From: Macrostomum lignano
Lineage: Eukaryota
Direction: 5' to 3'
Assembly: GCA_002269645.1 (NCBI GenBank)
Contig: NIVC01000757.1
Span: 21,036-85,035, forward strand
Length of the DNA stretch: 64,000 nucleotides
A program made the position numbers and the translations under genes. Positions 765-45,743 of the stretch are shown piece by piece. The notes beneath the pieces are model-generated. The model worked only from the letters and a program-made list of their open reading frames with translations. It did no database searches and had not been told where the DNA came from. Each line of letters begins with the position of its first letter. Within the stretch, counting starts at the first letter, position 1.

Positions 765-829
<65 letters not shown>

Positions 830-10190: not shown

Positions 10191-12143
10191 TCACAGCTGC
10201 GTCTTGTGCCCGCTCGCCGAATTCTCGTACTCGTTGTACAAGTAAGCTTTGTTATCCTGCGGGCCGGCAGCTGGCACCTTGTCCGCTCCGTCCGTTGGCT
10301 TCGGGAAGCCGTCGCCTCCTAGCTTGCTAGCAGCTACACCCAGAATAGCTATGATTATGATGAAGCCGAGGCAGCTGCAAACAATAATAATGATAAGCAG
10401 GTGCTCGGACTTCAATCCAGTGTAACTCGAACCCAACACCTGGTTTGTAGTCGGTGTTGTAGACGCCGAAATTGTGGCAGCTTTCTGGTCTAGCGTCGAC
10501 AGCATGGCAACCTCCTGTTGGCAGAAGCTCTGACCGTATAGTGTCTTAATAAAGGTCGGCTTGCGTGACTGATTTATCAGATATCCCGTGGCCATTGTCT
10601 CGGTCATCTGAAGCGCTCGCTTCGGATCGTAGCAGGCGTTCGACGGCCACAGGGTGTTGTTGAGATAGTCACGGCATTTTGGATTGCAGCCGGTCTTGGA
10701 GAAGCATCCATTGGCTGTCATTTCGGCTGATACCTGTTCAGTGAGGTTGCCGTTTCGCATGTCTGTGATGTTGCATTCCCGCTCTATGTGAGGCTCGATG
10801 CCGCTCTGCACCCAGCACATGTTGATTCCGGAGACGGCGATGCAGCTGCCCAGCTTTTCAGAATTCGGCTTGCTGACATTGTTGGGATAATAGGACAGAA
10901 ACGACAGGCACATTTCGTCACTAGTTCCTTCGCCGAAGTAAATTGTTTTATTGGACTTTAGAGTGCTGAAGTAGCATTCAGTTTTAACTTCGTCACCTCT
11001 GCGGTATTCGATTGGCGGATCGAACATGTTCATTTTAGGCGAGTTGTAATCGTAGGCCTGCAGCGGATGCAAATCCTTGACGAGAGTTCCATTTCGCCAT
11101 AGCGAGATGCGGCCCTGCACTCCGTAGCCGTGCATGTGGATGCCGGCTCCGGTGATGTAGCGCGTCTCCGTGTGGTACTTCTCCGTGCACACCGACGGGC
11201 AAGTGTGGTTAAAATTAACCACTGGCTGACGCGGCGGAAGCACGAGATTGCCTTCGCCGTACATTGCAGTGCCCTGGTCGTATTTTCTCAGGTTGGGGGT
11301 GAAGTAGAGCGCCAAGCCAGATGAGTCTGTATATGTACTGAGCTTAGCCGGATTGTTCCAGTGGAGCTCCAGCATTGCGTAGCGATAGCCCTCGCCTCCG
11401 ATGCGATAGCCGGTGTTGTTGTTATAGCACTCGCCCTCGAGCCCGAATGCCCACAGATTGACTATCTCATTGCAGTCCGAGCGGGCCATAAAGCACTCCT
11501 GCGGGGCGTCGAAAAACGTCTGATTCGGCTTCGAAGAGCAGGCGTACATGATCATGTGGTGCATGACGTTCTTGTTGTCAATGATTGGCTTTGATCCGAT
11601 CAGGTGAACAGGCGTGGCGGTGTTGTTCAGCTCGAACGCCTGACAGACATACGTGGTTTCCTTCGCTGGAACCGGGGTGTTCTTGTTGATGGTGAAGTTT
11701 CTCACGGTCACACTGGGGTCATTCATGGCTGGACAGCTGAATGCTTTTGGGCACACGTTCCACGCGTTGCTGCATTTTGTGGAGCCGAACTCGCAAATTC
11801 CAGGGTGGGACAGTCCAGTCGTACGCGCCGGAGTGGCTCCGACCTTCCACACGCAGTCGGGGTCTCCGAGCTCTTGGCCGTTCGTGAGTCCGTCGCCGTC
11901 CGAGTCCTTGCGGCACAGGTCGACCGTCCACTGGAGCCCGGCCGCCTTGAAGTCTAAACCGAACTTGTTGCGAGTGTCGGCTCCAACCGCACTCTCGTGC
12001 CCCACTCCGGCCCAGATGGTGCCCACCTGGCACGGGTTCGGGACGCGATCTCCGTTGGGTATCCTCGACTTGAAACTTGAGTAGCCGTGTACAGTCTGCA
12101 GCACAACGGCTGCAGTCGCTATTAAGCTGATTCCAAGTTTCAT
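10191..12143 (-). CDS. Temptin-domain copper type II monooxygenase, paralogue 1 (intact, 650 aa; signal peptide, temptin domain, Cu-monooxygenase N and C domains, Cys-rich domain, TM helix, cytoplasmic tail)
   Basis: Single-exon ORF; the first ATG is at 12143 (the ORF track starts at an upstream GTG). Temptin motifs: RIPNGDRVPNPC, FGLDFKAAG..WT..LC..DSDGDG..NGQELGDPDC.W, SHPG. Copper ligands: VMHHM, ELHWNNP, IHMHG, DEMC. Hydrophobic TM segment EHLLIIIIVCSCLGFIIIIAILGV. Confidence 0.88.
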   Translation of the reverse strand: MKLGISLIATAAVVLQTVHGYSSFKSRIPNGDRVPNPCQVGTIWAGVGHESAVGADTRNKFGLDFKAAGLQWTVDLCRKDSDGDGLTNGQELGDPDCVWKVGATPARTTGLSHPGICEFGSTKCSNAWNVCPKAFSCPAMNDPSVTVRNFTINKNTPVPAKETTYVCQAFELNNTATPVHLIGSKPIIDNKNVMHHMIMYACSSKPNQTFFDAPQECFMARSDCNEIVNLWAFGLEGECYNNNTGYRIGGEGYRYAMLELHWNNPAKLSTYTDSSGLALYFTPNLRKYDQGTAMYGEGNLVLPPRQPVVNFNHTCPSVCTEKYHTETRYITGAGIHMHGYGVQGRISLWRNGTLVKDLHPLQAYDYNSPKMNMFDPPIEYRRGDEVKTECYFSTLKSNKTIYFGEGTSDEMCLSFLSYYPNNVSKPNSEKLGSCIAVSGINMCWVQSGIEPHIERECNITDMRNGNLTEQVSAEMTANGCFSKTGCNPKCRDYLNNTLWPSNACYDPKRALQMTETMATGYLINQSRKPTFIKTLYGQSFCQQEVAMLSTLDQKAATISASTTPTTNQVLGSSYTGLKSEHLLIIIIVCSCLGFIIIIAILGVAASKLGGDGFPKPTDGADKVPAAGPQDNKAYLYNEYENSASGHKTQL

Positions 12144-12211
12144 GATTCGGGTCGGGTTCAAAGCTGCAGATTTGCGGCTCTGTCGTTCATTCTTTTCCAC
12201 GCATCTTTTAT

Positions 12212-12219
12212 TTTATATA
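12212..12219 (-). promoter_or_regulatory. Candidate TATA box of monooxygenase paralogue 1
   Basis: TATATAAA on the minus strand about 70 nt upstream of the ATG at 12143. Confidence 0.45.
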
Positions 12220-13147
12220 GGCGCCTTGTGCGTCATTTCTGCGTTCTCAGGTTCTCAGGTTATGTTTGTTTATGGTGAATGATTAACTTAGTAATTCTTA
12301 TTTGCATTTGAATCCATGCCCCGACTGGCCGTGTTCTGCCTACCGCACTGTTTGCCAATGTCGTGAGCTGCTTGGTTTCCAAAAGGGCAGCAAATGACTT
12401 GGATAAATATTGCTCATTGTTTGCTTGGTTACCAAGTACACGACAGACCTCGAAGAATCTACATACATGTTTATTTAAAGTGTTTTCAATGAAGTCAGAG
12501 GCAAACTTAAGATGATAAAGTTTTAGACGAGTTCTTTTTACGAGCTAAAATATACAGACTTTAACCCGTAAAAGTACTCGTAGCTCCTAAGGTGCCCAGA
12601 ACATAAAGTTCAGATCGTGTAAAACTCGACTCGTGTAGTGGCGCCGAAATGCTTAAATACCTGCGACCACAGATAAGAGTATTCCTCACATTTTCTATTG
12701 CATTAGCTGGCATTCTTTCATTCCGGGAAGGCAATCGGTAGATCGTATCTATAAGCCAAAACGCTAGAAGTAAAAATTGAGACATATTTCGACCGTCAAC
12801 GCAAATGTCCTAATGCTTAGTGTTACACAAGTCCAAACTCCTGAGTGAAACGTTTTATTATCATGGCTTTCCCCATAAATGTTTCCTTCTGCCAACAGTT
12901 CAGAAAGACAACGAACAATGGACCCGATGGTACTTTCTCTGTGTGATCTCTGGAGTCACATTCTCAAACTTCTGGCGAGGATCGTTCCTCTGCAATCAGT
13001 ATATTTTATAAGCTAACACACTGTACCACAGACCAAGTAATATAACTAGACTGCGCATGCCGGTATTCCCCACACTAAGGGGTGCATGTCTTGTTTGTCA
13101 TAGAGGAAATGGCACCCTCAGTTTTCCTCCCCCCGATCGATAATGGA

Positions 13148-13581: not shown

Positions 13582-15020
13582 ATGCAGCAAGCTAAAAAGC
13601 CAGGAAACAGTCACTTCTGCACAGCATTTGTTTGTAGCAACAGGGCCTCAAGTTCGTCAGCAATCTCATTTCACTCCTTCCCGAAGGACAATGATGTTAA
13701 GAAAAAATGGATAGCTGCTCGCCGCCGCAAAGATTTCAAACCTTCAAAGCATTCCAAGGTGTGCTCTGAGCACTTTATTCCAGAGTGTTTTGTGCAATCT
13801 CTAGAAGGATTTCACACCGGATTTGGTGTTGGAATCTTTCTGGACGGGAGGGTCATCGCTACCCACGCTCAATACACTGGGGTCAACTCCAGTGTCTTCC
13901 AAAATGAAGTTCTGGCCATCAGCTCCTGCACTGCAGAGCTTCTCGCCACTGGCGTTACTGGTAAGAACATCATTTTCCATTCGGACAGCCAAGCTGCCTT
14001 GCACGCCATCAGTGGCTGCTGCACCAATTCTGCTACAGTCCTCGATTGTATCAGACTCCTCAACATGTTGGGTTCCACCAACAAAATTACCCAAAATAAC
14101 AAAATTTCCCTCTTACTGACTTCCACCAACAAAATTAACAAAATTACAAAATTACAAAATCACCCACTAACAAAATGAGGGTTCCGGGGCATGTGGGGAT
14201 CCGAGGGAATAAGTTGGCCGACACCCTTGCAAAAGTTGGTGCCTCCGGCTCCTCTCTCGGTCCCGAACCTCTTGTCCCGATTCCCGGCTGTGTCATCGAC
14301 TCGCGCATCAAAGCGTGGATCAGGACTCAGCACCGCTCGACTTGGGCGAACTGCACCACCTGCAGGGAATCCAGAGGCGCTGTCCCTCAGCCCTCTCACC
14401 AGCTCCGGAAGCTCCTCTTGCGCCTCTCGCGTAGAGACATCCGGGCTGCCACCATGACCCTCTCAGGTCACGGCTGCTTCTCTAGGCACCAGTACTTGCA
14501 GGGCAACGCCACCAACGCCATCTGCAGTTTCTGCAACTCAGGTGACGAAACCGCTGAGCATTTCGTCAGCATCTGTCCCGCCTTTACGTGGGCCAGACTC
14601 ACTTACCTCGGGCCACACACATCTATTACTGAAGCGTGCAAACCCGAAAACTTTAACCAGCTCATGCGCTACCTTCGGGCCACCCGCAGGGCTGAACTCT
14701 CCTTTCCAGAGAGCACTATAGCTGCTGGCGACACTGGGGGATTCCCTGGGCGGCGCCAACCCTCCGTCAATAGCGACGCGTCGGCCGTTCAGGGATTAGA
14801 GGAATGGGCGCCCGCGCCTTCCCGCTGTGTCAAGTGTCCCCTCCGGGACAGCCCTGCAGCTAAGTCAAAGTAAGTCGTATTTCGGCCATTGGAACGGAAG
14901 CGACTCTATCCAGAAGCAGTGCCCTCCATTTTTCCCGGCTTTCCGAGTCATTTGAGTGACAGCATTCCTGCGAAGACGAGAAAGACAATGACTTGGAGGC
15001 TTAATAGGCAGTGTCGGCCA
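13582..15020 (+). pseudogene. THAP zinc-finger domain gene (probably transposon-derived), disrupted by a LINE insertion
   Basis: CTAFVCSN...FHSFP...W...VCSEHF (C2CH signature) lies before 13813 and RKRLYPEAVPSIF (AVPxIF box) after 14883. The two halves are in frame once 13814-14883 is removed. Confidence 0.8.
13814..14883 (+). mobile_element. 5'-truncated non-LTR retrotransposon (RNase H + CCHC end; LOA/R1/I-group-like)
   Basis: RNase H motifs SVFQNEVLAI, IIFHSDSQAAL, (W)VPGHVGIRGN..AD.LAK; CxxC..ETAEHF..C knuckle; TAAGTC-type tail; ATTTC repeated at both junctions. Confidence 0.85.
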
Positions 15021-16918: not shown

Positions 16919-16984
16919 ACTCTCAGAGCAGACAGCCGATGCAAGTTTTCAACTGCAATAACCTCAAGCTGCTGAAAAATAACA

Positions 16985-18909
16985 ATGAAAACGACTATGC
17001 TGCTGCTTTCTGTGGCTCTGGCTGCACTGCTCAGCTGCTCTCACGCGCACAAGTCGTTCCAGTCCCGAATCCCGAACGGCGACCGCGTCCCGAACCCGTG
17101 CCAGCCAGGCGCCATCTGGGCCGGAGTCGGACACCAGAGTCCCGCCGGCGCTAACGCCAGAAACCCATTCGGCATGGACTTCAAGGCGGCCGGGCTCCAG
17201 TGGACGGTCGACCTGTGCCGCAAGGACTCGGACGGCGACGGACTCACGAACGGCCAAGAGCTCGGAGACCCCGACTGCGTGTGGAAGGTCGGTGCGGCTC
17301 CAGCGCGAACGACTGGACTGTCCCACCCTGGCATCTGCCCGCTCGACTCCGCGACGTGCAAGAACTCGTGGACCGTGTGTCCGAAGGCCTTCAGCTGTCC
17401 AGCACTGGACGGTGCCAACGTGACCATGAGAAACCTCACCCTCAAACCGACTCCCGTGCCCGCCAATGAGACCACCTACATCTGTCAGGCGTTCGAGCTG
17501 AACAACACAGCCTCTCCGGTTCACCTGATCGGATCGAGGCCGATCATCGACAACAAGAACGTCATGCACCACATGATTATGTACGCCTGCAGTGTCAAGC
17601 CAGAACAGACGCTGTTCGATAATCCAAAACAGTGTTTCATGGCTCTTGGAAACTGCACCGAGATGTTGAACCTCTGGGGTTACGGAGTCAAAGGTGAGTG
17701 CTTCAACAGCAACGCGGGGTTCCGAATCGGCGGTGATGGCTTTCGGTACGGAGTTTTGCAGCTTCACTGGAACAACCCGGCGAGGCATTCAGGCTACACC
17801 GACGCTTCTGGCTTTGCTCTTTACTTTACACAAAACCTGCGACCATACGACTTGGGAACTGTGATGTATGGCGAGGGAAATCTCGTTCTCCCACCGCGAC
17901 AGCCGTTGATCAGCGTGAACCACACCTGCCCTTCGGTGTGCACGAACCGGTACCACAATGAGACTCGCTACATCACCGGGGCAACTATCCACATGCACAC
18001 CTATGGCATTAAAGGACGCATCTCGTTGTGGAGAAACGGAACTATGATTAAAGACCTGTCTCCTCTTCAAGTGTACGATTACAACTCACCGGAGATTCAT
18101 GCTTTCGACCCACCGATCGAATACCGGAAAGGTGACGAAGTAAAGACCGAATGTTATTTTAACACACAAAAAACCAACGTTACTATCTTCTTTGGCGAAG
18201 GTACTAGCGACGAGATGTGCCTTTCATTTCTATATTATTATCCTAACGATGTCTCCGTGAGCACCGACGATAAGCTCGGACGCTGCATCGGTGTGTCGGG
18301 CATCAATTCGTGTTGGTTGCGGAGCCGCATCACTCCTCAAATCGAGAGGGGTTGCAACATCACCGCGATGCGAAACGGTGAAATCCCAAACCGAGTTTAT
18401 TCTGAAATGGCCGCCAACAAGTGCTTCTCTCGAACGGGCTGCGACCCGCTGTGCCGCAACTACCTGGAGAACACTCTCTGGCCCAACAATGCCTGCTACG
18501 ACCCGAAGCGTTCGCGTCAAATGGCCGAAGTGTTGGCTCTGGGTTTATTTCAGCTCAATTCAGCTGTTACTCTGGCCATATCGTCTACTCTGTTCGGTCA
18601 GCGATTTTGCGAGCAGGAGATCAAAATGCTGGCAGAGATGGACCGACCGGCTGCTCCAGATCGTACAACAACCACCGCTAGGCCCCCGCTACTCCAACGT
18701 CGCAGAAGGGCGGCCTGAGCTCGGAGCACCTGCTGATCATCATCGTTGTGTGCAGCTGCCTGGGGTTCATTCTGATTCTGGCTCTGCTAATCTTTCTGTC
18801 AATCAAGTTGAAGGGTGCGAGCTCGGCTGCCGGGCTCAGCAGCGGACAGCAGGGCGCTCCGGACAAGTCGAGCGTCTATAAAGTGTACGACAATGAAGCG
18901 AGTGGCTGA
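16985..18909 (+). CDS. Temptin-domain copper monooxygenase, paralogue 2 (1-bp frameshift at the C-run 18683-18687; 577 aa as given, 641 aa with TM and tail if one C is added)
   Basis: All six Cu ligands are present (HH, H, HxH, M). The shifted frame continues ATPTSQKGGLSSEHLLIIIVVCSCLGFILILALLIFLSIKLKG...VYKVYDNEASG to TGA at 18907-18909. Confidence 0.85.
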
Positions 18910-20320: not shown

Positions 20321-20479
20321 ATTTTCTGTAGAGTATTATATCTCCCAGAAAAGTTATTTAAAATTGTTAACGTACTACTTAAATAGTAGTAATTTGAGGA
20401 GCATGTATAAGGATATGCGCTGAACCATACATATATTCGAATTAACCAATATAAAGAGAGAAATCTCGAGCATGCTAAT

Positions 20480-20860
20480 TTTAGAAATCACCCAATCACG
20501 TGCGACCAACAACTGTCAGTTCAAACCCCACCTTCAAGTCATCATTTGGTTTGCACTCGGGTTGCACCCGGATGAACCAATCAAAGTCTACCAGCTACGG
20601 TAACCAATCATGCGCTTTTACAGTAGACTAGTTGCGCAACTTTCTACCCTGTCATGCTTGACAGCCACCGAATCGTGACCCTTTGACATTTGCGAAGACA
20701 GTGATGTACGACCTCGAGAGAGGTCTGAACGCCTATAAATACAAGTGGTCCGGAACGGACCCGGAGCCACAATTCCTCCGGAAGGAGAAGAGCTCCGAAG
20801 AGGAAGCCACAGTCGGACTTCCTGGACCAATACTCGGTCGGTTGTTGCGGTAAGCCTTCC
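20480..20860 (+). promoter_or_regulatory. LTR-like promoter module 1 (CCAAT boxes, TATAAATA 20734, short leader, GGTAAG donor 20849)
   Basis: Motifs read directly; the LTR origin is an inference. Confidence 0.4.
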
Positions 20861-21739
20861 TTATTTGCGCCTGTTGTTGTTAGAGACGTCTCGCTCAAGT
20901 CCAGTGTGACTTGAGTTTAGTTTGAGTCTGTTGAGACTCTTGAGTCTGTTTAGACTCCACTGGTTGCAGTCTCCAGAAGGACTGCCCCTGATAGATCTTA
21001 GAAGACTATCAGTGGTTTCCGGAGCTATTCCTAGAGTGCATAGAGGCACTGCTAGAAGAAGGAGGCTTAATTAAGACCGCAGTTTGGCGCAGGGTACCCA
21101 TTGTTAATTTGGAAGCTTCCTATTGGTCCGAACGACAGATTCCGGCCGGAAATACTTCTAAAAGAGAGAAGAAGGAAACTCGGACCCGATCGACACCTGA
21201 AGACGTCTAGAAGTCTACGAGATCTACTGAGAAATCTACAGTTGAGAACGACTCAAGAACGAAATCTAAGAATCCGGATTAAAGGTAATTGAATACCTTC
21301 ATTTGATTACTGGGTTGCCTAGCTACAGAGCTAGAAGTGATTGTTCCTTGATTACAGTTGAGGACTGGTAATAAGGAACACATCATTTCTTGCACTTCCT
21401 GCTCAGTAAACAGCACCTTGCGCTTGTCTTCGGGCTGCATGCGCTTACTGCCATCGTTATTTCTCACCATGTAATACAATTCCCCATTGTGGATGCTAAA
21501 ATTTCTGCTCTTTCCCTGATATGACTTTTCAAATTGATTTTTTCTCTCTGGCGTTTAAGTCGACAGGGATTTGTGCGCAGTCACTGTATAGAAGAATGTG
21601 ATGTAACCACGCTCTGGTCGCGGGATAGGGCATGGGAACTTTTTCGAAAGTGCCTCCTATCCCGTGCACCCTCTGCACAGAGCTGTCGAGACTCGGCCAG
21701 GTCTCCGACCGGGCCTGGAGACTCCCGCTCTGCTGCACC

Positions 21740-22400
21740 CCTCCTGCTGCCTTGGTCCCGTCTCCCCTGCCGCCACACCTGCCTTTCCGGAGCCCCCTAC
21801 CCCTTTCTGTACCTCCCCCTCTACCCTATCTCTTCTGTTTTCCGCCCTATTCTTCCTGTACTTTCCCTATCCCCCTCTTTTTGTCTCCCTCTGCACTCTT
21901 TTCCTGCGCTGCCCCCTCTTTCTCTGTGTCTACTTACAGTATTTTGTGTGCTCACCGTCTCCCCATCCCCTCTCAAACTCCCAAACGGTGACGCAAGTCG
22001 TGTGACCCCCTCTCCCCCTCGGTGACTCATCGATGACTCATCCCCCTCTCTTGCGCAACCTTTTCTCATGCCATTGTTCTCCTCCCCAAATTTCTCATGC
22101 GACACCCACCCCACCTCCGCTTCTATTGTTCTCGTTTTTGATTCTTTTGTTCTCTCGACCCCACCAATTATCACATTTTCTCCGATTTTCTCTTTCTTTT
22201 GTTCTCGTTTTCGCACCTAATTATCACCTTTTCTCCAATGTTTACTTTTCTATTGTTCTCAATTCTCCCCAATTATCCCCGTTTTCCAATTCCTTTGTTC
22301 TCGACCCCAGCCCTATTGTTCTCAATGGTTGCTTGTGCAATACTTTCGCGACCACCCGCTGCGCCAATTATCCCCCACCCCACCTCCGGATTGCGCAATT
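21740..22400. repeat. Pyrimidine-rich low-complexity tract
   Basis: Strong C/T bias on the + strand with no consistent unit. Confidence 0.7.
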
Positions 22401-22439
22401 TCCCGATTTCTCATGTTGCTATGCCGGTCTCATGCTTCT

Positions 22440-22862
22440 CATCATGACTCATTCTGACGTCATTCTGCCGGCAGCCAATCAGAGAGAGGGAGCCATGGTA
22501 ACGACCTTGAGGAGGCGGCTGTGAGGTGTATAAAAGGAAGCGATTTCGGCATGAGAATCCTCAGACTCTTCCTCTCCTCGTCCTTCTTTGGACTTGCTGT
22601 CAGATTGAGTTCTGACCCATTCGTCTCTAAGACGAATCCCTGCCGGTCCGCGGTCTGTTACCGCCAAGTTATCCTTAGCTCCCCAAGTGAGCTCGCCTAT
22701 CGGCCAGCGGTCTGATACCGCCCAGCATCATCAGCATCGCCTGATCTACATCAGCGCCTCGTCGCTCCAGCGCATCGCCGCTTCACTGTCTGCCTGACTG
22801 CAGCCTACAGCCGCCACCGGTCACTCCGCCTCTCTCTCTCTCTGTGCAGCTGCCGGTAAGTT
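22440..22862 (+). promoter_or_regulatory. LTR-like promoter module 2 (TGACTCA 22445, TGACGTCA 22455, CCAAT 22475, TATAAAA 22529, GGTAAG donor 22855)
   Basis: Motifs read directly; function is inferred. Confidence 0.4.
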
Positions 22863-24703
22863 CCTGTTACTAATTTGTGCTCTAATTGTCTTTGCTTATC
22901 CGGGGTTTGCCTATTTCCCATTGTCTGATTAGAGAGCTGAGCCAATTGTGATACCGTATCTTTTGCTGTATTTTACTCAATAGTGAAGCCGCCTAATTGC
23001 CTAATTATTCGCCTAAAGGCCTAATTACTAACTACTAACTAACTTCATCATTATTCGATCTTTCACCATCATTTAACTCATGGCTTGCTAAGCCTTTCTC
23101 CCGGGGTGGCAAAGCATAAGGAAGTTTGGGTAAGCTAATGGCCTCTCCCCGTGCAAAGCCCGCCTGTGAGTGCGTGCTGCGGGGCCGCGTGTGCGTGCAG
23201 TAGAGGGATTAGCGAGTCTTGGCACAGAATGACAGTAGGAAGGTTGCAACCCCATGCTGACGCGTCCCTTCGCCCTGAGCAATCTAAACTAGAGACAGTA
23301 CATGTTCGCCTCATACTACTCTTAGTAATCAAAGTCGCAAGTCAGCCTCGCTCACAGCCACAAAGGATCCCCTGCTGAGAAATCCTCCAGGATTGAGCCC
23401 AGAGTTCCCGATCATGCCCCAAGCAGAGTCCCTGTACTCGGCTGCATGCGTCTCCCCTGTTAGCCTAAATCCCCTGGTAACCATTCCAGACGGGGCTCTA
23501 GCCTCGAGAGGTCTGGTAGAAAGATCCAGGTGCGCCAGGTCACATAGAGTGGTTGCAGCCACTCGGTCATACCATGACCGAGTGACCAACTATTGCACCT
23601 TGGCTACAGGTGGGGTCCATGTGGGTCCTTGGCCCTCTGGTCACGAAGCGCTACCAAAGCTACTAATCATGTGGGCGGGACAGTCTGGTGCTGGAGGTCC
23701 GTCAGGTCATTGCCCGGTCATAGGCAGCCTACGGTCATTGCCCCCTCTAGCCAAGCGTTCGTCTCTCAATAGGAGCGGACAGGCGACAAGGGCGGTTACA
23801 TCAAATATTTGATTCAAAGCAGCCATTTGACCAGTAGAAAGTAAGAAAATCGCAAACTGACAATTGCTCATCATATGTTTTTCACTACTTATATGACACA
23901 ATCAAAACATTCGAAATATGCACAGAGACGAAGAATGATGCACAAGTCTGACCAAACCCTAAAGTTAGCCCTCTGGGGGCATGTGAATGAACAAATGTTC
24001 TAGATAGATGAACTTATCGAAAAAAAAGTTTTGCAAGCTAGACTACTCACGTGCTGAGTATAGCTCTTATTTTCTAAGATAATACTCCGCAGAGTCTAGC
24101 ATGGCGGCGATCTCTAACCTTATCTTATGTCATGGTTTTTGATATCCGTGCGGGAGATCGTGAAGAGTTCAGGAGTGGTGATCAGTCACTCGAAAACTCC
24201 CACTTCCAAGACCGCAAGTCTGGGAACAGAATTTAGTGATCACTTACGGTTGCGGCTTGCGGGCTCCTCTTCTTGTATTCCTGTAGCGCGCTGTTCCTGT
24301 CATGGGCTTCTTATTTTCCTCAGGAGTGGATTTCGTCAAGTCTGAAGTCGGCTGTATGTGAGAGCAATTTTAATAAACGTATCAATTCGAATCATCGGCG
24401 TTAAAGGATTCCTCGAGCTCGGAACTCAATATCAGAAATGCGCCCTCACAATATCTAATCAACTCAATAACTATAAGGTCTTCCAAGGAAGGGCGTCTTC
24501 TTCTAGAAATAACGGAATCAGAGTCGTGTGCCCCTGGGTATCAAAAGTCAACGAACGTCTAAGAGTATCGGAATCGGTTAAGTGGATCCTATCCAATCCC
24601 TTAGGAATAGGGACACCTTTAAACTCGTAATTCGACAAGATTAATCGTTAAACAACCGCCGATAATAACTCAGCTCTCAATATGAAATAACAAAGACGTC
24701 TTA

Positions 24704-29661: not shown

Positions 29662-31125
29662 ATGCTGCTGCTTCCTGTGGCCCTGGCTGCACTGCTCAGC
29701 TGCTCTCACGCGCACAAAATTTTCCAGTCCCGAATCCCGAACGGCGACCGCGTCCCGAACCCGTGCCAGCCAGGCGCCATCTGGGCCGGAGTCGGACACG
29801 AAAGCCCCGCCGGCGCCAATGCGAGAAACCCCTTCGGCTTGGACTTCAAGGCGGCCGGGCTCCAGTGGACGATCGACCTGTGCCGCAAGGACTCGGACGG
29901 CGACGGACTCAAAAACGGCCAAGAGCTCGGAGACCCCGACTGCGTGTGGAAGGTCGGTGCGGCTCCAGCGCGAACGACTGGACTGTCCCACCCTGGCATC
30001 TGCCCGCTCGACTCCGCGACGTGCAAGAACTCGTGGACCGTGTGTCCGAAGGCCTTCAGCTGTCCAGCACTTGACAGTGTCAACGTGACCGTCAGGAACT
30101 TCACCCTTAAACCGACTGCCGTGCCCGCCACTGAGACCACCTACATCTGTCAGGCGTTCGAGCTGAACAACACAGCCTCTCCGGTTCACCTGATCGGATC
30201 GAGGCCGATCATCGACAACAAGAACGTCATGCACCACATGATTATGTATGCCTGCACTGCAAAACCCGCAGAGACACTTTTCAACAGTCCACAACCGTGT
30301 TTAATGCTCATTGAAAACTGCACCGAGTTGATGAACGTCTGGGCCTACGGACTTGAAGGTGAGTGCATCAACAGCAACGCGGGGTTCCGAATCGGCGGTG
30401 ATGGCCTTCGGTACGGAGTTTTGCAGCTTCACTGGAACAACCCGATGAAACATTCAGGCTACACCGATGCATCTGGCTTTGCTCTTTACTTTGCACAAAA
30501 CCTTCGACCATACGACATGGGAACTCTTATGTATGGCGAGATAAATCTCGTTCTTCCACCGCGACAGCCGTTAATCAGCGTGAACCACACGTGCCCTTCG
30601 GTGTGCACGAACCGGTACCACACTGAGACTCGCTACATCACCGCAGCATTCATCCACATGCACGCTTATGGCATTAAAGGACGCATCTCGTTGTGGAGAA
30701 ACGGAACTATGATTAAAGACCTGTCTCCTCTTCAAGTGTACGATTACAACTCACCGGAGATTCATGCTTTCGACCCACCGATCGAATACCGGAAAGGTGA
30801 CGAAGTAAAGACCGAATGCTATTACAGCACACTAAAAACCAACGTTTCAATCTTCTATGGCGAAGGCACCAGAGATGAAATGTGCTTCGCATTTGTATAC
30901 TACTATCCGAACAATGTAGCCCAAAGTAACCATGACAAGCTCGGACACTGTGTCGTAGTATCTGGAATCAACCAGTGCTGGGTGGAGAGCGGCATCACTC
31001 CCCAAGTTGAGAGGGGTTGCAACATCACCGCGATGCGAAACGGTGACATGCCGAAACGAGTTTATTCTGAAATGGCCGCCAACAAGTGCTTCTCTCGGAC
31101 CGGCTGCGACCCGCTGTGGCTCTAA
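29662..31125 (+). CDS. Temptin-domain copper monooxygenase, paralogue 3 (487 aa, 3'-truncated, no TM)
   Basis: Signal peptide, temptin domain and all six Cu ligands are intact. Homology stops after GACCCGCTGTG at ~31119; TAA at 31123-31125 is followed by AATAAA at 31133-31138. Confidence 0.82.
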   Translation: MLLLPVALAALLSCSHAHKIFQSRIPNGDRVPNPCQPGAIWAGVGHESPAGANARNPFGLDFKAAGLQWTIDLCRKDSDGDGLKNGQELGDPDCVWKVGAAPARTTGLSHPGICPLDSATCKNSWTVCPKAFSCPALDSVNVTVRNFTLKPTAVPATETTYICQAFELNNTASPVHLIGSRPIIDNKNVMHHMIMYACTAKPAETLFNSPQPCLMLIENCTELMNVWAYGLEGECINSNAGFRIGGDGLRYGVLQLHWNNPMKHSGYTDASGFALYFAQNLRPYDMGTLMYGEINLVLPPRQPLISVNHTCPSVCTNRYHTETRYITAAFIHMHAYGIKGRISLWRNGTMIKDLSPLQVYDYNSPEIHAFDPPIEYRKGDEVKTECYYSTLKTNVSIFYGEGTRDEMCFAFVYYYPNNVAQSNHDKLGHCVVVSGINQCWVESGITPQVERGCNITAMRNGDMPKRVYSEMAANKCFSRTGCDPLWL

Positions 31126-35726: not shown

Positions 35727-37411
35727 ATGCTGCTGCTTTCTGTGGCTCTGGCCGCACTGCTCAGCTGCTCTCACGCACACAAAATTTTCCAGTCCCGAAT
35801 CCCGAACGGCGATCGCGTCCCGAACCCGTGCCAGCCAGGCGCCATCTGGGCCGGAGTCGGACACCAGAGTCCCGCCGGCGCTAACGCGAGAAACCCCTTC
35901 GGCTTGGACTTCAAGGCGGCCGGGCTCCAGTGGACGGTCGACCTGTGCCGCAAGGACTCAGACGGCGACGGACTCACGAACGGCCAAGAGCTCGGAGACC
36001 CCGACTGCGTGTGGAAGGTCGGTGCGGCTCCGTCGAGAACGACTGGACTGTCCCACCCTGGCATCTGCCCGCTCGACTCCGCGACGTGCAAGAACTCGTG
36101 GACCGTGTGTCCGAAGGCCTTCAGCTGTCCAGCATTCGAAGAGCCCGGTGTTTTCGTGAGAAACTTCACCCTCAAACCGACTCCCGTGCCGCCACAGAGA
36201 CAACCTACATCTGTCAGGCGTTCGAGCTGAACAACACTGCCTCTCCGGTTCACCTGATCGGATCGAGGCCGATCATTGACAACAAGAACGTCATGCACCA
36301 CATGATTATGTATGTCTGCAATGTCAAGCCCGCAGAGACGCTTTTCAATAATTCACAACCGTGTTTCATGCCCATTGGAAACTGCACCGAGTTGCTGAAC
36401 CTCTGGGCCTATGGACTCGAAGGTGAGTGCATCAACAGCAACGCGGGATTCCGATTTGGCGGTGAGGGTATTCGGTATGGAGTTTTGCAGCTTCACTGGA
36501 ACAACCCGATGAGGATTTCTAACTACACAGATGCTTCTGGCTTCGCTCTTTACTTTACACAAAACCTTCGACCATACGACTTGGGAACTCTTATGTATGG
36601 CGAGATAAATCTTGTTCTTCCACCGCGACAGCCGTTGATCAGCGTGAACCACACGTGCCCTTCGGTGTGCACGAACCGGTACCACACTGAGACTCGCTAC
36701 ATCACCGCCGTACTCATTCACATGCACGCTTATGGCATTAAAGGACGCATCTCGCTGTGGAGAAACGGAACTATGATTAAAGACCTGTCTCCTCTTCAAG
36801 TGTACGATTTCAAATCCCCGAAGGTGCACACTTTCGACCCACCGATCGAATACCGGAAAGGTGACGAAGTAAAGACCGAATGCTACTACAGCACACTAAA
36901 AAGCAACGTTACCATCTTCCTTGGAGAAGGCGCCAGAGATGAAATGTGTTTCGCTTTGATATACTACTATCCGAACAATGTAGCCCAAACTAACCATGAC
37001 AAGCTCGGACACTGTGTCGCTGTATCTGGAATCAACCGGTGCTGGGTGGAGAGCGGCATCACTCCTCAGATCGAGAGGGGTTGCAACATCACCGCGATGC
37101 GAAACGGTGACATGCCGAAACGAGTTTATTCTGAAATGGCCGCCAACAAGTGCTTCTCTCGGACCGGCTGCGACCCGCTGTGCCGCAACTACCTGGAGAA
37201 CACTCTCTGGCCCAACAATGCCTGCTACGACCCGAAGCGCTCGCGTCAAATGGCCGAAGTGTTGGCTCTGGGTGTCTTTCAGCTCAATGCGGCTGTGACC
37301 CGTACCATCTCGGCTACTCTGTTCGGTCAGAGATTTTGCGAGCAGGAGATCAAAATGCTGGCAGAGATGAACCGACAGGCTGCTCCAGCTCAGACAAATA
37401 CCATCGCCTAA
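35727..37411 (+). CDS. Temptin-domain copper monooxygenase, paralogue 4 (1-bp frameshift at ~36189-36190; 561 aa if repaired; TM eroded)
   Basis: ORF 35727 carries the signal peptide and temptin domain; the overlapping frame from ~36191 carries all six Cu ligands. GTGCCGCC here corresponds to GTGCCCGCC in copies 2, 3 and 5. Confidence 0.8.
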
Positions 37412-42544: not shown

Positions 42545-42665
42545 TATCGCGACCCCATTGTTCGATTCCGTGTGCGCCCACATTGATCTGGGGCTGTGTG
42601 CAGTTCACAGCCGTGAGGGCCAACCCCCAAGGCTCAGAGAGTGTACATGCCTGACGATTAGACAG
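42545..42665 (+). mobile_element. tRNA-derived SINE family A, diverged copy 3 with internal deletion
   Basis: GCGACCCC..GTTCGATTCC...TGGGGCTG...TGAGGGCCAACCCCCAAGG...GTGTACATGCCTGACGAT matches the reverse complement of 1770-1972. Confidence 0.65.
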
Positions 42666-43925
42666 TCAAAGGGCAGTCGAATGGGCGGAATTGCCTCAGG
42701 AAGAAATTATGAAACGATATCACCGAAGGCGTCCTGCAATTTTTTGTATTTCCTAACAGCTTTTCCCAAGCGCCCAGCCAACTCCAACCCTCTATCTGTC
42801 CGTGCAGCTCAAGAGCTAGAGTGTTGCTCAGTGCATCTTTTAGTTAAAATTGGTTTGACCAAATTGAGTTGGCCGTACGCGCGTTCCTGCCAATAAGGCT
42901 GACAATATCAGTAGGCAATTTCATTTTTAGTATATTTGATTTGATTTCGATCATGGCGTATCCTGCTTTAAAAGCTTTTTAAACTTGGGGTTGAATTGAC
43001 TACAGCGGGGATAGGGATCTATCAATAATATACGACTCGTATATACTTACTCGTAGTAAGGCTCGTGTGTAAGCCTTCACTCGCCACTCCATCAGCAACC
43101 ACAAATGAAAGTCGCAGATCTAATCTTCTTTTTCGTGCTTTAATATTGAGTAAAATTTTTACCAGTTCGACCCTATTTCGTACAGACCATATTTCACAGT
43201 CGTTTGATTTGCTAGATAGAAGAGCAGCTAATCAAGCATCGGGGACTACGACTGTGGATGCACTCTACAAAACAGGGGGTGCTTTTTCTCTAAATGCAAC
43301 GTCGAGATAAATTTTCAGCTGTTTAGCACTAAAAATTCACAATATCTTATCTTCAAGACTTCCGAATTGGAAACAGAGCACGCATCGTACTAATATCGAA
43401 TTATATCGAATTTGCAAGAAAATGTACTCTTAGGCTTACTTTTTGGCGATATACGGTACTTGTAGATAGTCACTACCCAGCTAAGTGAACTAAACAGCTT
43501 ATTATTGCTGAAAAATTTTGATTTATATTTATATAGAAGACTCGCGAAAAATGAAGTAAACATAGTGAAGAATATTTAAATTATTAGCACAAGAAAAGCT
43601 GCATAAATTTAGTAAAAACTACCGGATAGATTTGTTCTCAAGCTATTAATTTGGGCAGTGCAGTCGCAATTGACTTATGGTTTGGTTTTTTCACACGAAA
43701 GGAACAAGCACTAAAATTGAATTTGAATGACAATGCTACAAATAGAGATTAAGGAACGCACCGTAAAATATTTATTAGTGTTAATATTTGAGTCTTTAAG
43801 TCTTCGACTTTGTATTGATTTAGCAAAAATGTTTTTTTGACGTGAGGTGGAAAGTCATTGGTCAGTATACAGTATAGTCGTCTTCTGCGTTAATGGAATT
43901 CTCTATTGTCAGCACGTCTCGCAGT

Positions 43926-45743
43926 TTAGCTTCTGTGGTTGAGCCTGATTGACAGATAGGTTAGCAGAGCCAAAAACAGAACAAACCCCAGGCAGCTGCA
44001 CACAACGATGATGATCAGCAGGTGCTCGGAGGTCAACCCGCCTTTTTGGAGAATCGGCGCAGCCGGCAGCGCCTCGATGAGTTTCGTTGGAGCTGGAGCA
44101 TTCAACAAATTGATCTCCTGCTCGCAGAAGCGCTGTCCATACAGAGTACGGGCGATTGTTTCGTGATTAGATGACGGTACCATGCCCAAAGCCATGGCTT
44201 CAGCCATCTGTCTCGACCTTGTCGGGTCGTAGCAAGCATTTAAGGGCCACAGAGTGAAGTTCAGGTAGTTTCGACAAGCTGGATCGCATCCAGTCCGAGC
44301 AAAGCAGTTGTTGGCGGCCATTTCCGACATCACTCGATTCGGCATTTCTCCACTCCTCATCGACGTGATGTTACAGTCTCGTTCCACATGCGGAACTATG
44401 TTGCTTGCAACCCAGCACAAGTTGATTGCAGCTATAGCCATACACTGGGTCAGTCTCTCTGACGCAGGAACCCTGGCCTTATTTGGATACAACCACAGAA
44501 ATGACAGGCACATTTCGTCATTTTTAGCGGCTCCAGAAAATACCGTCCGGTCATTCTTCAGTGTGGTAAAGTAGCACTCTGTTTTCAATTCATCTCCGGG
44601 TTGATACTCAACCGTTTGGTTCAAGAAAATAACTTTTGGAGAGTTGTAACTGTATTCCTGGAGCGGCCAGATGTCCCTCACTAAAGTTTCATTCCTCCAG
44701 AGAGAAATGCGTCCTCTAATACCGTTGGTGTGCATGTAGATGCCTACTCCTGTGATGTAGCGAGTCTCAGTGTGGTACCGGTTAGTGCACACCGAAGGGC
44801 ACGTGTGGTTCACGCTGATCAACGGCTGTCGCGGTGGGAGAACGAGATTTCCCTCGCCATACATCACAGTTCCCAAGTCGGATGGTCGCAGGTTTTGTGT
44901 AAAGTAGAGAGCGAAGCCAGAAGCGTCGGTGTAGCCTGAATGCCTCGCCGGGTTGTTCCAGTGAAGCTGCAAAACTCCGTACCGAAAGCCATCACCGCCG
45001 ATTCGGAACCCCGCGTTGCTATTGATGCACTCGCCTTCGAGTCCGTAGGCCCAAAGGTTCATCATCTGGGTGCAGTTTCTGTGGCCCATTAAACACTGCC
45101 GTGGATTATCGAACAGCGTCTGTTCTGGCTTGACACTGCAGGCGTACATAATCATGTGGTGCATGACGTTCTTGTTGTCGATGATCGGCCTCGATCCGAT
45201 CAGGTGAACCGGAGAGGCAGTGTTGTTCAGCTCGAACGCCTGACAGACGTATGTCGTCTCAGTGGCGGGCACGGGAGTCGGTTTGAGGGTGAAGTTTCTC
45301 ACGAAAACACCGGGCTCTTCGAATGCTGGACAGCTGAAGGCCTTCGGACACACGGTCCACGAGTTCTTGCACGTCGCGGAGTCGAGCGGGCAGATGCCAG
45401 GGTGGGACAGTCCAGTCGTTCGCGCCGGAGCCGCACCGACCTTCCACACGCAGTCGGGGTCTCCGAGCTCTTGGCCGTTCGTGATTCCGTCGCCGTCCGA
45501 GTCCTTGCGGCACAGGTCGATTGTCCAGCTGAAGCTGGCGGCCTTGAAGTCCAAGCCGAAGGGATTTATAGCGTCAGCACCGGCGGGACTCTGGTGTCCG
45601 AGTCCGACCCAGATGTCGCCTTGCTGGCACGGATTCGGGACCCGGTCGCCGTTCGGTATTCGGGACTGGAACATTCTGTACGCGTGAGAGCAGCTGAGCA
45701 GTGCGGCCAGAGCCGCATATATTATCAGCGCATTTTTTGTCAT
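43926..45743 (-). CDS. Temptin-domain copper monooxygenase, paralogue 5 (intact ORF, 605 aa, TM present, short tail, CuM His replaced by Tyr)
   Basis: ATG at 45743; signal peptide, temptin domain, HH, H and DEMC are present. HxH reads IYMHT (TAC at 44738-44736). TM segment EHLLIIIVVCSCLGFVLFLALLTYL. Confidence 0.88.
   Translation of the reverse strand: MTKNALIIYAALAALLSCSHAYRMFQSRIPNGDRVPNPCQQGDIWVGLGHQSPAGADAINPFGLDFKAASFSWTIDLCRKDSDGDGITNGQELGDPDCVWKVGAAPARTTGLSHPGICPLDSATCKNSWTVCPKAFSCPAFEEPGVFVRNFTLKPTPVPATETTYVCQAFELNNTASPVHLIGSRPIIDNKNVMHHMIMYACSVKPEQTLFDNPRQCLMGHRNCTQMMNLWAYGLEGECINSNAGFRIGGDGFRYGVLQLHWNNPARHSGYTDASGFALYFTQNLRPSDLGTVMYGEGNLVLPPRQPLISVNHTCPSVCTNRYHTETRYITGVGIYMHTNGIRGRISLWRNETLVRDIWPLQEYSYNSPKVIFLNQTVEYQPGDELKTECYFTTLKNDRTVFSGAAKNDEMCLSFLWLYPNKARVPASERLTQCMAIAAINLCWVASNIVPHVERDCNITSMRSGEMPNRVMSEMAANNCFARTGCDPACRNYLNFTLWPLNACYDPTRSRQMAEAMALGMVPSSNHETIARTLYGQRFCEQEINLLNAPAPTKLIEALPAAPILQKGGLTSEHLLIIIVVCSCLGFVLFLALLTYLSIRLNHRS

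What the first reader, a model, noticed from the sequence alone, without database searches (positions are those of the whole stretch)
10191..45743. Cluster of five intronless temptin-copper-monooxygenase fusion genes: a candidate undescribed secreted chemistry or signalling system
Seen: five paralogues (-,+,+,+,-) in 36 kb. Each has a signal peptide, a temptin-like domain with a DSDGDG..NGQE Ca-binding-type loop, and a type II copper monooxygenase core without an intervening DOMON domain, followed by a Cys-rich domain (partly truncated in copy 3). All are single-exon, whereas the flanking housekeeping genes are intron-rich. Established: temptin is an Aplysia water-borne pheromone component, and DBH/TBH/PHM/MOXD enzymes use HH..H (CuH) and HxH..M (CuM) to hydroxylate amines or peptides. 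Similar fusions may exist in molluscs, so the architecture itself may not be new. Inference: a lineage-specific expansion of extracellular hydroxylases with a pheromone-type module, possibly making or modifying secreted cues, mucus, adhesive or defence compounds. The intronless state suggests a retroposed founder amplified in a TE-rich island.
Basis: partly seen in the sequence, partly recalled or inferred. Interest (0 to 1): 0.75.

Follow-up and report, generated by a model that had tools for sequence, protein, structure and literature searches.

The report
Flatworm temptin–copper monooxygenase gene cluster
Five neighbouring intron-less genes of the flatworm Macrostomum lignano encode copper hydroxylases of the dopamine-beta-hydroxylase type that carry a 'temptin' module instead of the usual DOMON domain; the architecture was described in 2009 and the enzymes have never been assayed, so this is a real local expansion of a known, still unexplained enzyme family.

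Summary
Exactly five paralogues (-,+,+,+,-) lie at 10191-45743, each with signal peptide, Temptin_C, Cu2_monooxygen, Cu2_monoox_C and an 8-Cys C-terminal domain, and no DOMON. The window is Macrostomum lignano. All five are single-exon, whereas a Lottia homologue has at least 8 coding exons.

- Copies 1, 2 and 5 end in a TM helix and tail, so they are type-I membrane proteins. Copies 3 and 4 are the TM-less, secreted type.
- The window has 1-bp homopolymer differences that break copies 2 and 4. Both are intact on other public contigs of this locus.
- Copy 3's 3' end is deleted in this version only.
- Copy 5 has Tyr at a CuM histidine.

All copies show purifying selection (dN/dS 0.14-0.37). The family grew by DNA-level duplication and was reshaped by gene conversion.

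The architecture is not new. Takahashi et al. 2009 described the 'Temptin/mono-oxygenase hybrid', and hundreds of homologues exist. I found no functional study.

New here: the hybrid also occurs in diatoms, fused to cytochrome b561. The temptin module also occurs fused to b561 alone and to NOX-type ferric reductases. Its overlap with DOMON's known partners points to a redox or metal accessory role rather than a pheromone role.

The parts
10191..12143 (-). Copy 1 (650 aa): signal peptide, temptin module, CuH and CuM domains, helical 8-Cys domain, TM helix (10320-10409) and cytoplasmic tail. Intact. The oldest lineage in the cluster.
   Evidence: ORF. Pfam. Identical to database protein P0004. 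All six Cu ligands present. AF2 model pLDDT 87.8 with a TM helix at residues 579-608. TM translation. Sister to a transcript-like contig of another macrostomid.
16985..18903 (+). Copy 2 (641 aa when read through). Temptin_C 17042-17335, Cu2_monooxygen 17435-17788, Cu2_monoox_C 17876-18247, Cys-rich domain about 18260-18664, TM 18730-18807. The window has a C5 run at 18683-18687 where another contig has C6, which shifts the TM and tail out of frame.
   Evidence: P0123 (Mlig017064g4, 641 aa) is identical up to the run and continues with exactly the peptide found in the window's other frame.
29662..31125 (+). Copy 3 (487 aa). Complete through the Cu core and cut inside the Cys-rich domain after 31118. 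A dispersed repeat of about 300 bp follows at 31203-31419.
   Evidence: On contig NIVC01000861.1 (L005) the same gene runs on to '...QTNTIA*' (TM-less form), and its 3' flank matches copy 4's at 81%.
35727..37411 (+). Copy 4 (561 aa when read through). Same modules, no TM, so it is the secreted type. The window has CC at 36189-36190 where contig NIVC01003975.1 has CCC, which splits the gene into two frames.
   Evidence: In L003 the ORF is intact at 561 aa. The 2-kb region differs by 0 mismatches and 3 gaps.
43926..45743 (-). Copy 5 (605 aa). Has a TM and a very short tail. The first CuM histidine is Tyr (YMH). It is a mosaic: the 5' 325 codons are 85-99% identical to copies 2 and 4, while the 3' half is old and divergent but still constrained.
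   Evidence: One residue differs from GenBank PAA49104.1 (BOX15_Mlig007919g2).
13582..14873 (+). Transposon-derived ORFs between copies 1 and 2: a THAP domain, followed by an ORF that looks RNase-H/LINE-like by eye.
   Evidence: Pfam THAP, E 4e-13. The second ORF has no Pfam hit, so its assignment rests on my reading only.
20328..23803 (.). About 3.5 kb present in the window but absent from the otherwise collinear contig L005. About 1 kb of it (20327-21387) recurs at the unlinked P0001 locus at 88.6% identity, so it is a repeat or TE insertion.
5415..8935 (+). Flanking multi-exon gene for a KIF1-binding-protein-like product, with at least 4 coding ORF segments separated by repeat-filled gaps. 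It serves as the intron-containing contrast to the cluster.
   Evidence: Pfam KBP_C, E 1.6e-38, covering only profile positions 132-227 within one ORF. ORF segments.
47692..49002 (+). Flanking LicD-family (fukutin-like) ORF on the other side of the cluster.
   Evidence: Pfam LicD, E 2e-9.

Best explanation
What it is. The cluster is a Macrostomum-specific tandem expansion of the 'temptin/mono-oxygenase hybrid' family. Each gene encodes an N-glycosylated protein of the secretory pathway with these modules, in order:
- a signal peptide;
- a disulfide-rich temptin module built around an EF-hand-type Ca-binding loop (DSDGDGxTNGxE);
- the two-domain, two-copper catalytic core of the PHM/DBH family (CuH: His195, His196, His261; CuM: His336, His338, Met411; copy 2 numbering);
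- a helical 8-Cys domain;
- then either a single TM helix with a short tail (copies 1, 2, 5) or nothing (copies 3, 4, soluble form).

How it most likely works (inferred from the family). O2 is activated at CuM and a C-H bond of the substrate is hydroxylated. Two electrons from ascorbate enter through CuH. The reaction takes place in the lumen of secretory compartments or at the cell surface. The substrate is unknown. It is not a glycine-extended peptide, because the three PHM residues that hold the peptide carboxylate are replaced by hydrophobic residues. A small hydrophobic or aromatic compound is therefore more likely.

The temptin module. It replaces DOMON and packs on the core. I infer that it is an accessory module tied to electron or metal supply, not a pheromone, because in protists it is also fused to cytochrome b561 and to NOX-type ferric reductases.

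How the cluster evolved. It arose from an intron-less founder by segmental DNA duplication. Repeated gene conversion then homogenised parts of the coding sequences. Copy 5, and the unlinked paralogue P0006, have altered or lost copper ligands yet remain under purifying selection, so part of the family may have moved to a non-canonical or non-catalytic role.
For: Identity and architecture:
- Pfam domains in all copies.
- DBH (4zel) is the best solved relative by sequence (6e-30), then PHM (about 1e-16).
- The AF2 model of copy 1 has pLDDT 87.8 and pTM 0.78. Foldseek gives DBH 2e-25 and PHM about 1e-20 over about 300 columns, i.e. the catalytic core only.

Catalytic competence:
- All six Cu ligands are kept in copies 1-4 and in 117 of 118 homologues.
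- All core Cys are invariant.
- dN/dS is 0.14-0.37 for every pair, and 0.05-0.33 within the CuM domain.

Topology:
- Signal peptides, 8-12 NxS/T sequons and one TM segment in copies 1, 2 and 5.

Not PHM-like in substrate:
- The positions of PHM R240, N316 and Y318 hold G/T/F/L, L/F and F/L. Across homologues they are mostly hydrophobic or aromatic (L/F/W/I, F/Y/L, F/I/L).

Temptin module:
- pLDDT rises from 75 alone to 83-97 in the full-length model.
- There are 2,688 cluster representatives.
- Of the top 136, 57 have the Cu core, 9 have cytochrome b561 and 3 have Ferric_reduct plus NAD_binding_6.
- Single chains carrying temptin, the Cu core and b561 occur in the diatoms Entomoneis and Chaetoceros. 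The Chaetoceros protein is from a genome assembly. They keep all six ligands and the temptin core motifs.
- From established knowledge: cytochrome b561 is the ascorbate-driven transmembrane electron carrier that supports DBH and PAM in secretory granules.

Evolution:
- All M. lignano members examined are single-exon, against at least 8 exons in Lottia.
- Copies 3 and 4 share 3' flank. P0001 and P0006 share upstream sequence.
- Synonymous divergence of copy 5 from copy 2 jumps from about 0.2 to 1.0-2.2 along the gene.
- P0001 is 99% copy 2 apart from a P0006-like 5' end.
Against: - No enzyme of this architecture has been assayed in any species, as far as the searches show. Activity, reductant and substrate are all inferred from the family.
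- No expression data for the five genes were available. The only hint is two transcript-like contigs of about 2 kb from another macrostomid.
- The role proposed for the temptin module rests on domain co-occurrence only. Its model has no structural relative in the PDB.
- The stand-alone temptin of Aplysia and Biomphalaria is reported to act as an attractant (PMC10075465).
- The NJ tree does not resolve whether the animal and diatom hybrids share one origin (support 55%).
- Retroposition of the founder is not shown. No parent copy with introns and no poly(A) or target-site remnant was seen.
Confidence: 0.7

Rival explanations
1. One reading: the temptin part is a pheromone-type signalling module. 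On this view the proteins make, modify or present secreted chemical cues (mating or aggregation signals, mucus, adhesive or defence compounds).
For: Stand-alone temptin is part of the Aplysia attractin pheromone complex, and recombinant Biomphalaria temptin is reported to attract snails (PMC10075465 and PMC5685644). Copies 3 and 4 lack a TM and would be secreted. The snail temptin shares the full core motif with these enzymes.
Against: Three of the five proteins are membrane-anchored. The module occurs in diatoms and other protists fused to b561 and ferric reductases, where pheromone signalling of the Aplysia kind is not a plausible role. In the full-length model it packs confidently onto the catalytic core rather than behaving as a free ligand. 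Papers on snail temptins themselves note expression patterns that are hard to reconcile with a role in attraction alone, and a role in shell formation has been reported (Peng et al. 2021, cited).
Confidence: 0.15
2. They are the flatworm's ordinary amine-transmitter enzymes (tyramine or dopamine beta-hydroxylase), as automatic annotation names many mollusc homologues.
For: DBH is the closest solved relative. Many homologues are named TBH-like, DBH-like or MOXD1-like by NCBI.
Against: The DOMON domain that characterises DBH, TBH and MOXD is absent. A preprint on bivalve monoamine genes separates one true DBH from several 'DBH-like' paralogues and reports expression of the latter in the larval gut. 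At least seven paralogues in one genome, including forms with altered ligands and secreted forms, do not fit a single conserved transmitter enzyme.
Confidence: 0.07
3. The proteins are mainly non-catalytic: copper- or calcium-binding matrix or receptor-like proteins that only retain the fold (pseudoenzymes).
For: Copy 5 has Tyr for a CuM histidine. The unlinked paralogue P0006 has lost five of six ligands, yet both evolve under purifying selection. Temptin and 'DBH-like' genes appear in lists of mollusc shell-matrix and mantle candidates.
Against: Copies 1-4, and 117 of 118 homologues across phyla, keep every copper ligand and every core cysteine. That is hard to explain without catalysis.
Confidence: 0.06
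4. The cluster is decaying (pseudogenes) or an assembly artefact.
For: In the window, copy 2 and copy 4 have frameshifts and copy 3 is truncated. The locus occurs on several contigs of the same assembly.
Against: Both frameshifts are single-base differences in C-runs, and the same genes are intact on other contigs. The copy 4 region shows 0 mismatches and 3 gaps. dN/dS is well below 1 for all copies. The five copies differ from each other by 10-37% in protein sequence.
Confidence: 0.02

Closest known systems
Temptin/mono-oxygenase 'hybrid' gene of Lophotrochozoa (Takahashi et al. [quoted passage not shown]
   Same: Same order of modules: an N-terminal temptin sequence in place of DOMON, followed by PF01082 and PF03712. 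The window genes align over 66-96% of their length with mollusc, brachiopod and bryozoan members at 36-46% identity. All invariant Cys and Cu ligands are shared.
   Different: Here the gene is intron-less, tandemly amplified to five copies (at least seven in the genome), and diversified into membrane-anchored, soluble and ligand-altered forms. The 2009 paper held the hybrid to be restricted to Lophotrochozoa. Diatom genomes and transcriptomes carry it too, extended by cytochrome b561.
Dopamine beta-hydroxylase / MOXD1 / tyramine beta-hydroxylase (DOMON-type copper type II monooxygenases; human DBH structure 4ZEL, PMC4846438)
   Same: Two-copper catalytic core with identical ligand sets. Best sequence and fold match. 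A luminal glycoprotein with a further helical, Cys-containing domain after the core. Membrane-bound and soluble forms both exist.
   Different: There is no DOMON beta-sandwich. The N-terminal module is a small, mostly irregular, disulfide-rich domain with three short helices. The C-terminal helical domain did not align with DBH's dimerisation domain in Foldseek (about 300 aligned columns only). Anchoring is by a C-terminal TM helix rather than an uncleaved signal anchor.
Peptidylglycine alpha-hydroxylating monooxygenase (PHM domain of PAM)
   Same: Same fold and same copper ligands. PAM is also a type-I membrane protein with a short cytosolic tail (my knowledge).
   Different: The residues at the positions of R240, N316 and Y318, which bind the peptidyl-glycine substrate, are hydrophobic here. 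There is no lyase (PAL) domain.
Temptin (Aplysia and Biomphalaria water-borne protein pheromone)
   Same: Same domain (Pfam Temptin_C, E about 1e-38). It shares the IPNG, GVGH, DSDGDG..ELGDP and HPG motifs and the disulfide Cys.
   Different: Temptin is a stand-alone secreted protein of about 110-130 residues. Here the domain is the N-terminal module of a 560-650 residue enzyme, followed by an extra Cys-rich linker.
DOMON-cytochrome b561 proteins (CYBDOM; e.g. Arabidopsis CRR and HYP1 ferric reductases, PMC10784552, PMC10784544)
   Same: This is an analogy at the level of domain partnership. DOMON pairs with the DBH-type core and with b561. The temptin module pairs with the same two, and in addition with NOX-type reductases.
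   Different: No sequence or fold relationship between temptin and DOMON was detected. Whether temptin carries a redox cofactor, as CYBDOM DOMON domains carry haem, is unknown.

Membership tests
[quoted passage not shown] | Two-domain beta-sandwich catalytic core (Pfam PF01082 + PF03712) | tested here: met
   Both Pfam domains score above their curated cut-offs in all five copies. Foldseek of the AF2 model gives DBH 2e-25 and PHM about 1e-20.
[quoted passage not shown] | CuH site: three histidines (HH ... H) | tested here: met
   H195, H196 and H261 (copy 2 numbering) are present in all five copies when aligned to DBH and PHM.
[quoted passage not shown] | CuM site: HxH ... M | tested here: met
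   Met in copies 1-4 (HMH ... M). Not met in copy 5, which has YMH ... M. The unlinked paralogue P0006 has YMQ ... T.
[quoted passage not shown] | Ascorbate- and O2-dependent hydroxylation activity | not testable with these tools
   Needs recombinant protein. No published assay of any temptin-type member was found.
DBH / TBH / MOXD subfamily | N-terminal DOMON domain (Ig-like beta-sandwich) | tested here: not met
   No DOMON hit at E<0.01. The N-terminal module is Temptin_C, modelled with three short helices and almost no strands, and has no PDB fold match.
DBH / TBH / MOXD subfamily | C-terminal helical dimerisation domain with inter-chain disulfides | tested here: inconclusive
   A helical domain with 8 invariant Cys follows the core. 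Foldseek aligned only about 300 core columns to 4ZEL, and there is no Pfam family for the domain.
PHM / PAM | Peptidyl-glycine binding residues R240, N316, Y318, and an associated lyase domain | tested here: not met
   The equivalent positions hold G/T/F/L, L/F and F/L. No further enzyme domain was found.
Temptin/mono-oxygenase hybrid (Takahashi et al. 2009) | Temptin sequence at the N-terminus directly followed by the two monooxygenase domains, with no DOMON | tested here: met
   with the definition taken from PMC2762978.
Temptin (pheromone) | Temptin domain with the DSDxD Ca-binding loop and conserved disulfides | tested here: met
   Pfam Temptin_C, E about 1e-38. The motifs align with Biomphalaria temptin.
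Temptin (pheromone) | Small stand-alone secreted protein with attractant activity | tested here: not met
   The domain is part of 560-650 residue enzymes, three of which are membrane-anchored. Attractant activity is not testable here.
Retrogene (processed copy) | No introns, where orthologues or the parent gene have them | tested here: met
   All M. lignano members examined are single-exon. Lottia P0024 has at least 8 coding exons over 9.3 kb.
Retrogene (processed copy) | Poly(A) remnant, target-site duplications, or an identifiable intron-containing parent | tested here: not met
   No A-tract remnant or shared UTR was seen downstream, and no intron-containing paralogue was found among the database hits. 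These features may have eroded, so this does not exclude an old retroposition.

The most novel reading that the evidence does not exclude
The temptin fold is not primarily a pheromone. On this reading it is an ancient eukaryotic extracytoplasmic module, functionally analogous to DOMON, that works with electron-transfer machinery: cytochrome b561, NOX-type reductases and the CuH site of DBH-type monooxygenases. Its two invariant histidines (GVGH, HPG) may hold a metal or cofactor that relays electrons or delivers copper. The animal temptin-monooxygenases, including this flatworm cluster, would then be self-contained hydroxylases whose diatom relatives still carry their own b561 electron supply. 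The mollusc pheromone temptin would be a secondarily freed copy of the module.
Probability: 0.3. Interest if true: 0.65.

Novelty: new member of a known kind. Interest (0 to 1): 0.42.

Why it matters
The DBH/PHM family makes noradrenaline, octopamine and all amidated peptides, yet several of its branches, such as MOXD1/2 and the many invertebrate 'DBH-like' genes, have no known substrate. The temptin-type branch is large: hundreds of genes in molluscs, and at least seven in this flatworm. It is routinely mis-named as DBH, TBH or PAM by automatic annotation, which can mislead studies of invertebrate monoamine and peptide signalling.

Macrostomum lignano is a tractable model with RNAi, transgenesis and in situ hybridisation. 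An intron-less, compact cluster with membrane-bound, soluble and ligand-altered forms is a practical entry point for finding the substrate and the role of the temptin module.

The link seen here between the temptin module and b561 or ferric-reductase partners in protists gives a concrete, testable idea for what the module does. It also bears on the long-open question of what DOMON does in DBH.

Tried and rejected
1. Fold search of the isolated temptin model against the PDB gave no match (best E 5.2). The profile search of PDB sequences gave only sub-threshold hits to calmodulin EF-hand loops (E about 1). These support the Ca-loop reading at motif level only.

2. The first two literature searches with 'temptin' matched 'tempting' and were useless. 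They were repeated with whole-word matching.

3. A search for the M. lignano gene identifiers in papers found nothing. No expression data could be linked to these genes.

4. I considered that copies 2 and 4 are pseudogenes. I rejected this because both frameshifts are single-base C-run differences and the genes are intact on other contigs.

5. I considered that homology confined to the CDS means independent retroposition of each copy. I rejected this for at least c3/c4 and P0001/P0006, which share flanking DNA. The abrupt changes of synonymous divergence along the genes point to conversion tracts instead.

6. I considered an N-terminal histidine brace, as in LPMOs, because several mature N-termini would start with His. 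I rejected this because the position is Tyr in copies 1 and 5 and is not conserved in other taxa.

7. The NJ tree could not place DBH relative to the animal and protist hybrids (55% support). Single versus multiple origin of the fusion stays open. DOMON-type sequences from the same species were not available to me.

8. Model coordinates are not exposed, so distances between the temptin histidines and CuH could not be measured.

Full report
**Observation.** The window holds five long ORFs with the reported coordinates and orientations. Pfam assigns Temptin_C, Cu2_monooxygen and Cu2_monoox_C to copies 1, 2, 3 and 5 (E 1e-15 to 1e-39). It assigns the two copper domains to the main ORF of copy 4. 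The signal peptide and temptin part of copy 4 lie in a second frame at 35727-36230. No DOMON domain is detected. A tblastn of a full-length relative against the whole window finds exactly these five loci and nothing else.

**Organism and state of the copies.** The closest database proteins are from Macrostomum lignano. GenBank PAA49104.1 (BOX15_Mlig007919g2) differs from copy 5 by one residue, and copy 1 is itself in the database.
- The locus is present on several contigs of assembly GCA_002269645.1.
  - L003 (NIVC01003975.1) matches window 34667-49907 at 99.1%.
  - L005 (NIVC01000861.1) matches 10543-20327 at 99.8% and 23804-31118 at 98.6%.
- Copy 2: the window ORF stops at 577 aa because a C-run has 5 Cs instead of 6 at 18683-18687. 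P0123 (Mlig017064g4, 641 aa) is identical up to that point and continues with the TM helix and tail that sit in the window's other frame.
- Copy 4: the split is CC against CCC at 36189-36190. In L003 the gene is an intact 561-aa ORF, and the 2-kb region differs by 0 mismatches and 3 gaps. I regard both frameshifts as most likely homopolymer errors, or at most null alleles.
- Copy 3: the window diverges after 31118, and a dispersed repeat of about 300 bp follows. In L005 the gene runs on through the whole Cys-rich domain and ends like copy 4 without a TM. L005 has a TAC ATC to TAA TCC shift at about codon 160 that may itself be a consensus error.
- In its complete form, the cluster encodes three membrane-anchored proteins (1, 2, 5) and two soluble ones (3, 4).

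**Anatomy of the protein.** Across 118 homologues the following are invariant or nearly so:
- In the temptin module: IPNG, GVGH, RNpFG, DSDGDGxTNGxELGDP, HPG and seven Cys.
- All nine core cysteines.
- Eight Cys in the C-terminal domain, which has no Pfam family.

The DSDGDGxTNGxE stretch has the spacing of a 12-residue EF-hand loop. The only resemblance to solved structures, below threshold, is to calmodulin loops.

An AF2 model of copy 1 built on 68 homologues is confident (pLDDT 87.8, pTM 0.78). The temptin module reaches pLDDT 83-97 in the full-length model against 75 when modelled alone, which suggests that it packs on the core. The C-terminal domain is helical, and a TM helix spans residues 579-608. 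Foldseek returns DBH and PHM over about 300 columns, i.e. the core only. The temptin model alone has no PDB relative. Each protein has 8-12 N-glycosylation sequons.

**Catalytic residues.** Aligned with DBH and PHM, copies 1-4 keep all six copper ligands, as do 117 of 118 homologues. Copy 5 has Tyr for the first CuM histidine. The unlinked paralogue P0006 has lost five of six. The PHM residues that bind the substrate carboxylate (R240, N316, Y318) are replaced by hydrophobic residues throughout the family. These enzymes are therefore unlikely to be peptide-amidating.

**Evolution of the cluster.**
- Protein identities are 63-71% (copy 1 against the others), 74-75% (copy 5 against copies 2-4) and 84-90% among copies 2-4.
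- dN/dS is 0.14-0.37 for all pairs.
- DNA similarity between the copies is essentially confined to the CDS. This is not evidence for separate retropositions.
  - Copies 3 and 4 share 3' flank at 81% in the untruncated version.
  - P0001 and P0006 share 215 nt of upstream sequence.
- The genes are mosaics.
  - Copy 5 is 85-99% identical to copies 2 and 4 over its first 325 codons (dS about 0.2) and far more divergent downstream (dS 1.0-2.2, omega 0.14-0.25).
  - P0001, at another locus, is 99% copy 2 except for a P0006-like 5' end.
- These patterns show DNA-level duplication followed by gene conversion.
- All M. lignano members examined are single-exon. Their neighbours have introns, and Lottia P0024 has at least 8 coding exons. 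An intron-less founder is therefore likely and retroposition is a reasonable cause, but no direct trace of it was found.
- In an NJ tree of the core, the Macrostomum sequences form one clade. Copy 1 is sister to a transcript-like contig from another macrostomid.

**What is known.** Takahashi et al. [quoted passage not shown] They noted that temptin replaces DOMON and proposed the hybrid as a lophotrochozoan synapomorphy not found elsewhere. Later papers mention 'temptin' and 'DBH-like' genes in lists from work on shell formation, mantle, larval gut or infection response. I found no functional or biochemical study of the hybrid. The architecture itself is thus already known. The flatworm cluster is a new, expanded member.

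**What the wider search adds.** An exhaustive HMMER search with the temptin module of copy 1 finds 2,688 cluster representatives.
- Among the best 136, 57 carry the copper core, 9 carry cytochrome b561 and 3 carry a NOX/FRE-type ferric reductase.
- Individual scans show several architectures:
  - temptin + Cu core + b561 in one chain (Entomoneis paludosa; Chaetoceros tenuissimus GFH49968.1, from a genome assembly; marine metagenomes);
  - temptin + b561;
  - temptin + Ferric_reduct + NAD_binding_6.
- The diatom proteins keep all six copper ligands and the temptin core motifs, including both invariant histidines.

Two conclusions follow. First, the hybrid is not restricted to Lophotrochozoa. 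Second, the module's partners are a DBH-type core, b561 and a transmembrane reductase. The first two are the partners known for DOMON (DBH, MOXD and CYBDOM proteins). Cytochrome b561 is, by established knowledge, the electron supplier of DBH and PAM in secretory granules. This is why I read the temptin module as an accessory of electron or metal supply rather than a pheromone. That step is inference from co-occurrence only.

**Verdict.** The finding is a genuine gene cluster, correctly described in outline. Its architecture has been published and is widespread, so the claim of an undescribed system does not hold. The function remains unknown everywhere. The most likely mechanism is ascorbate-driven, two-copper hydroxylation of a non-peptide, probably hydrophobic, substrate in the secretory lumen or at the cell surface. 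Interest is moderate. The value lies in a tractable model organism with a compact, diversified set of these enzymes, and in the new lead on the temptin module.

Noticed in passing
L004 10001-11902 (M. lignano contig NIVC01000723.1; protein P0006, BOX15_Mlig002911g1): An unlinked, single-exon paralogue has lost five of the six copper ligands (RH, gap, YMQ, T). It keeps all Cys, the temptin module and the TM, and evolves with dN/dS 0.26-0.35, so it is a likely pseudoenzyme.
   Followed up: partly
L001 10001-11923 (contig NIVC01000362.1; protein P0001, BOX15_Mlig027408g1): A dispersed paralogue is 97% identical in DNA to copy 2 from codon 23 to 7 nt past the stop. Its signal peptide and 215 nt of upstream sequence are P0006-like. 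This looks like an ectopic gene-conversion tract covering almost the whole CDS.
   Followed up: partly
proteins P0210, P0233, P0240, P0181, P0231 (diatoms Entomoneis paludosa and Chaetoceros tenuissimus; marine metagenomes): Single polypeptides combine temptin, the DBH-type copper core and a C-terminal cytochrome b561 domain. I did not find this architecture mentioned in the searchable literature.
   Followed up: partly
proteins P0211, P0265, P0261 (marine metagenome or Logan assemblies): A temptin module is fused to a NOX/FRE-type ferric reductase (Ferric_reduct + NAD_binding_6). P0206 is temptin + cytochrome b561 only.
   Followed up: partly
window 16964-17788(-), 29605-30294(-), 35771-36301(-), 45156-45767(+): Long antisense ORFs (176-274 aa) overlap the 5' halves of copies 2-5 and are similar to each other. 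They are probably a by-product of the codon composition of the sense strand.
   Followed up: no
window 260-1114, 49445-50425, 51764-53191, 57749-59002, 59320-60246: Very long short-period tandem arrays give spurious ORFs in several frames. The arrays around 50-53 kb differ in length between the window and contig L003, where a PHO4-family gene model is annotated across that region.
   Followed up: no
window 33689-33909 and 34073-34274: Two arrays of a 15-bp unit (TCCGGACATTTGCCC) lie in opposite orientation about 160 bp apart between copies 3 and 4, forming a large imperfect inverted repeat.
   Followed up: no
window 9069-9614, 28634-28967, 31203-31419, 54031-54317, 54951-55255: A dispersed repeat of about 200-300 bp also occurs several times at the unlinked locus L001. 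One copy sits right after the copy 3 breakpoint.
   Followed up: no
window, 60-75 nt upstream of each ATG (e.g. 12205-12220, 16910-16925): Each copy has its own TATA-like element at a similar distance upstream of the start codon, although the upstream regions are otherwise unrelated. Copies 3 and 4 show faint similarity there.
   Followed up: no
L003 19600-20032 and the database proteins P0122, P0124: Public annotation calls short 'temptin-only' products (136-145 aa) at copy 4 even where the full 561-aa ORF is intact. Some 'temptin' entries for M. lignano in UniProt are therefore fragments of these enzymes.
   Followed up: partly
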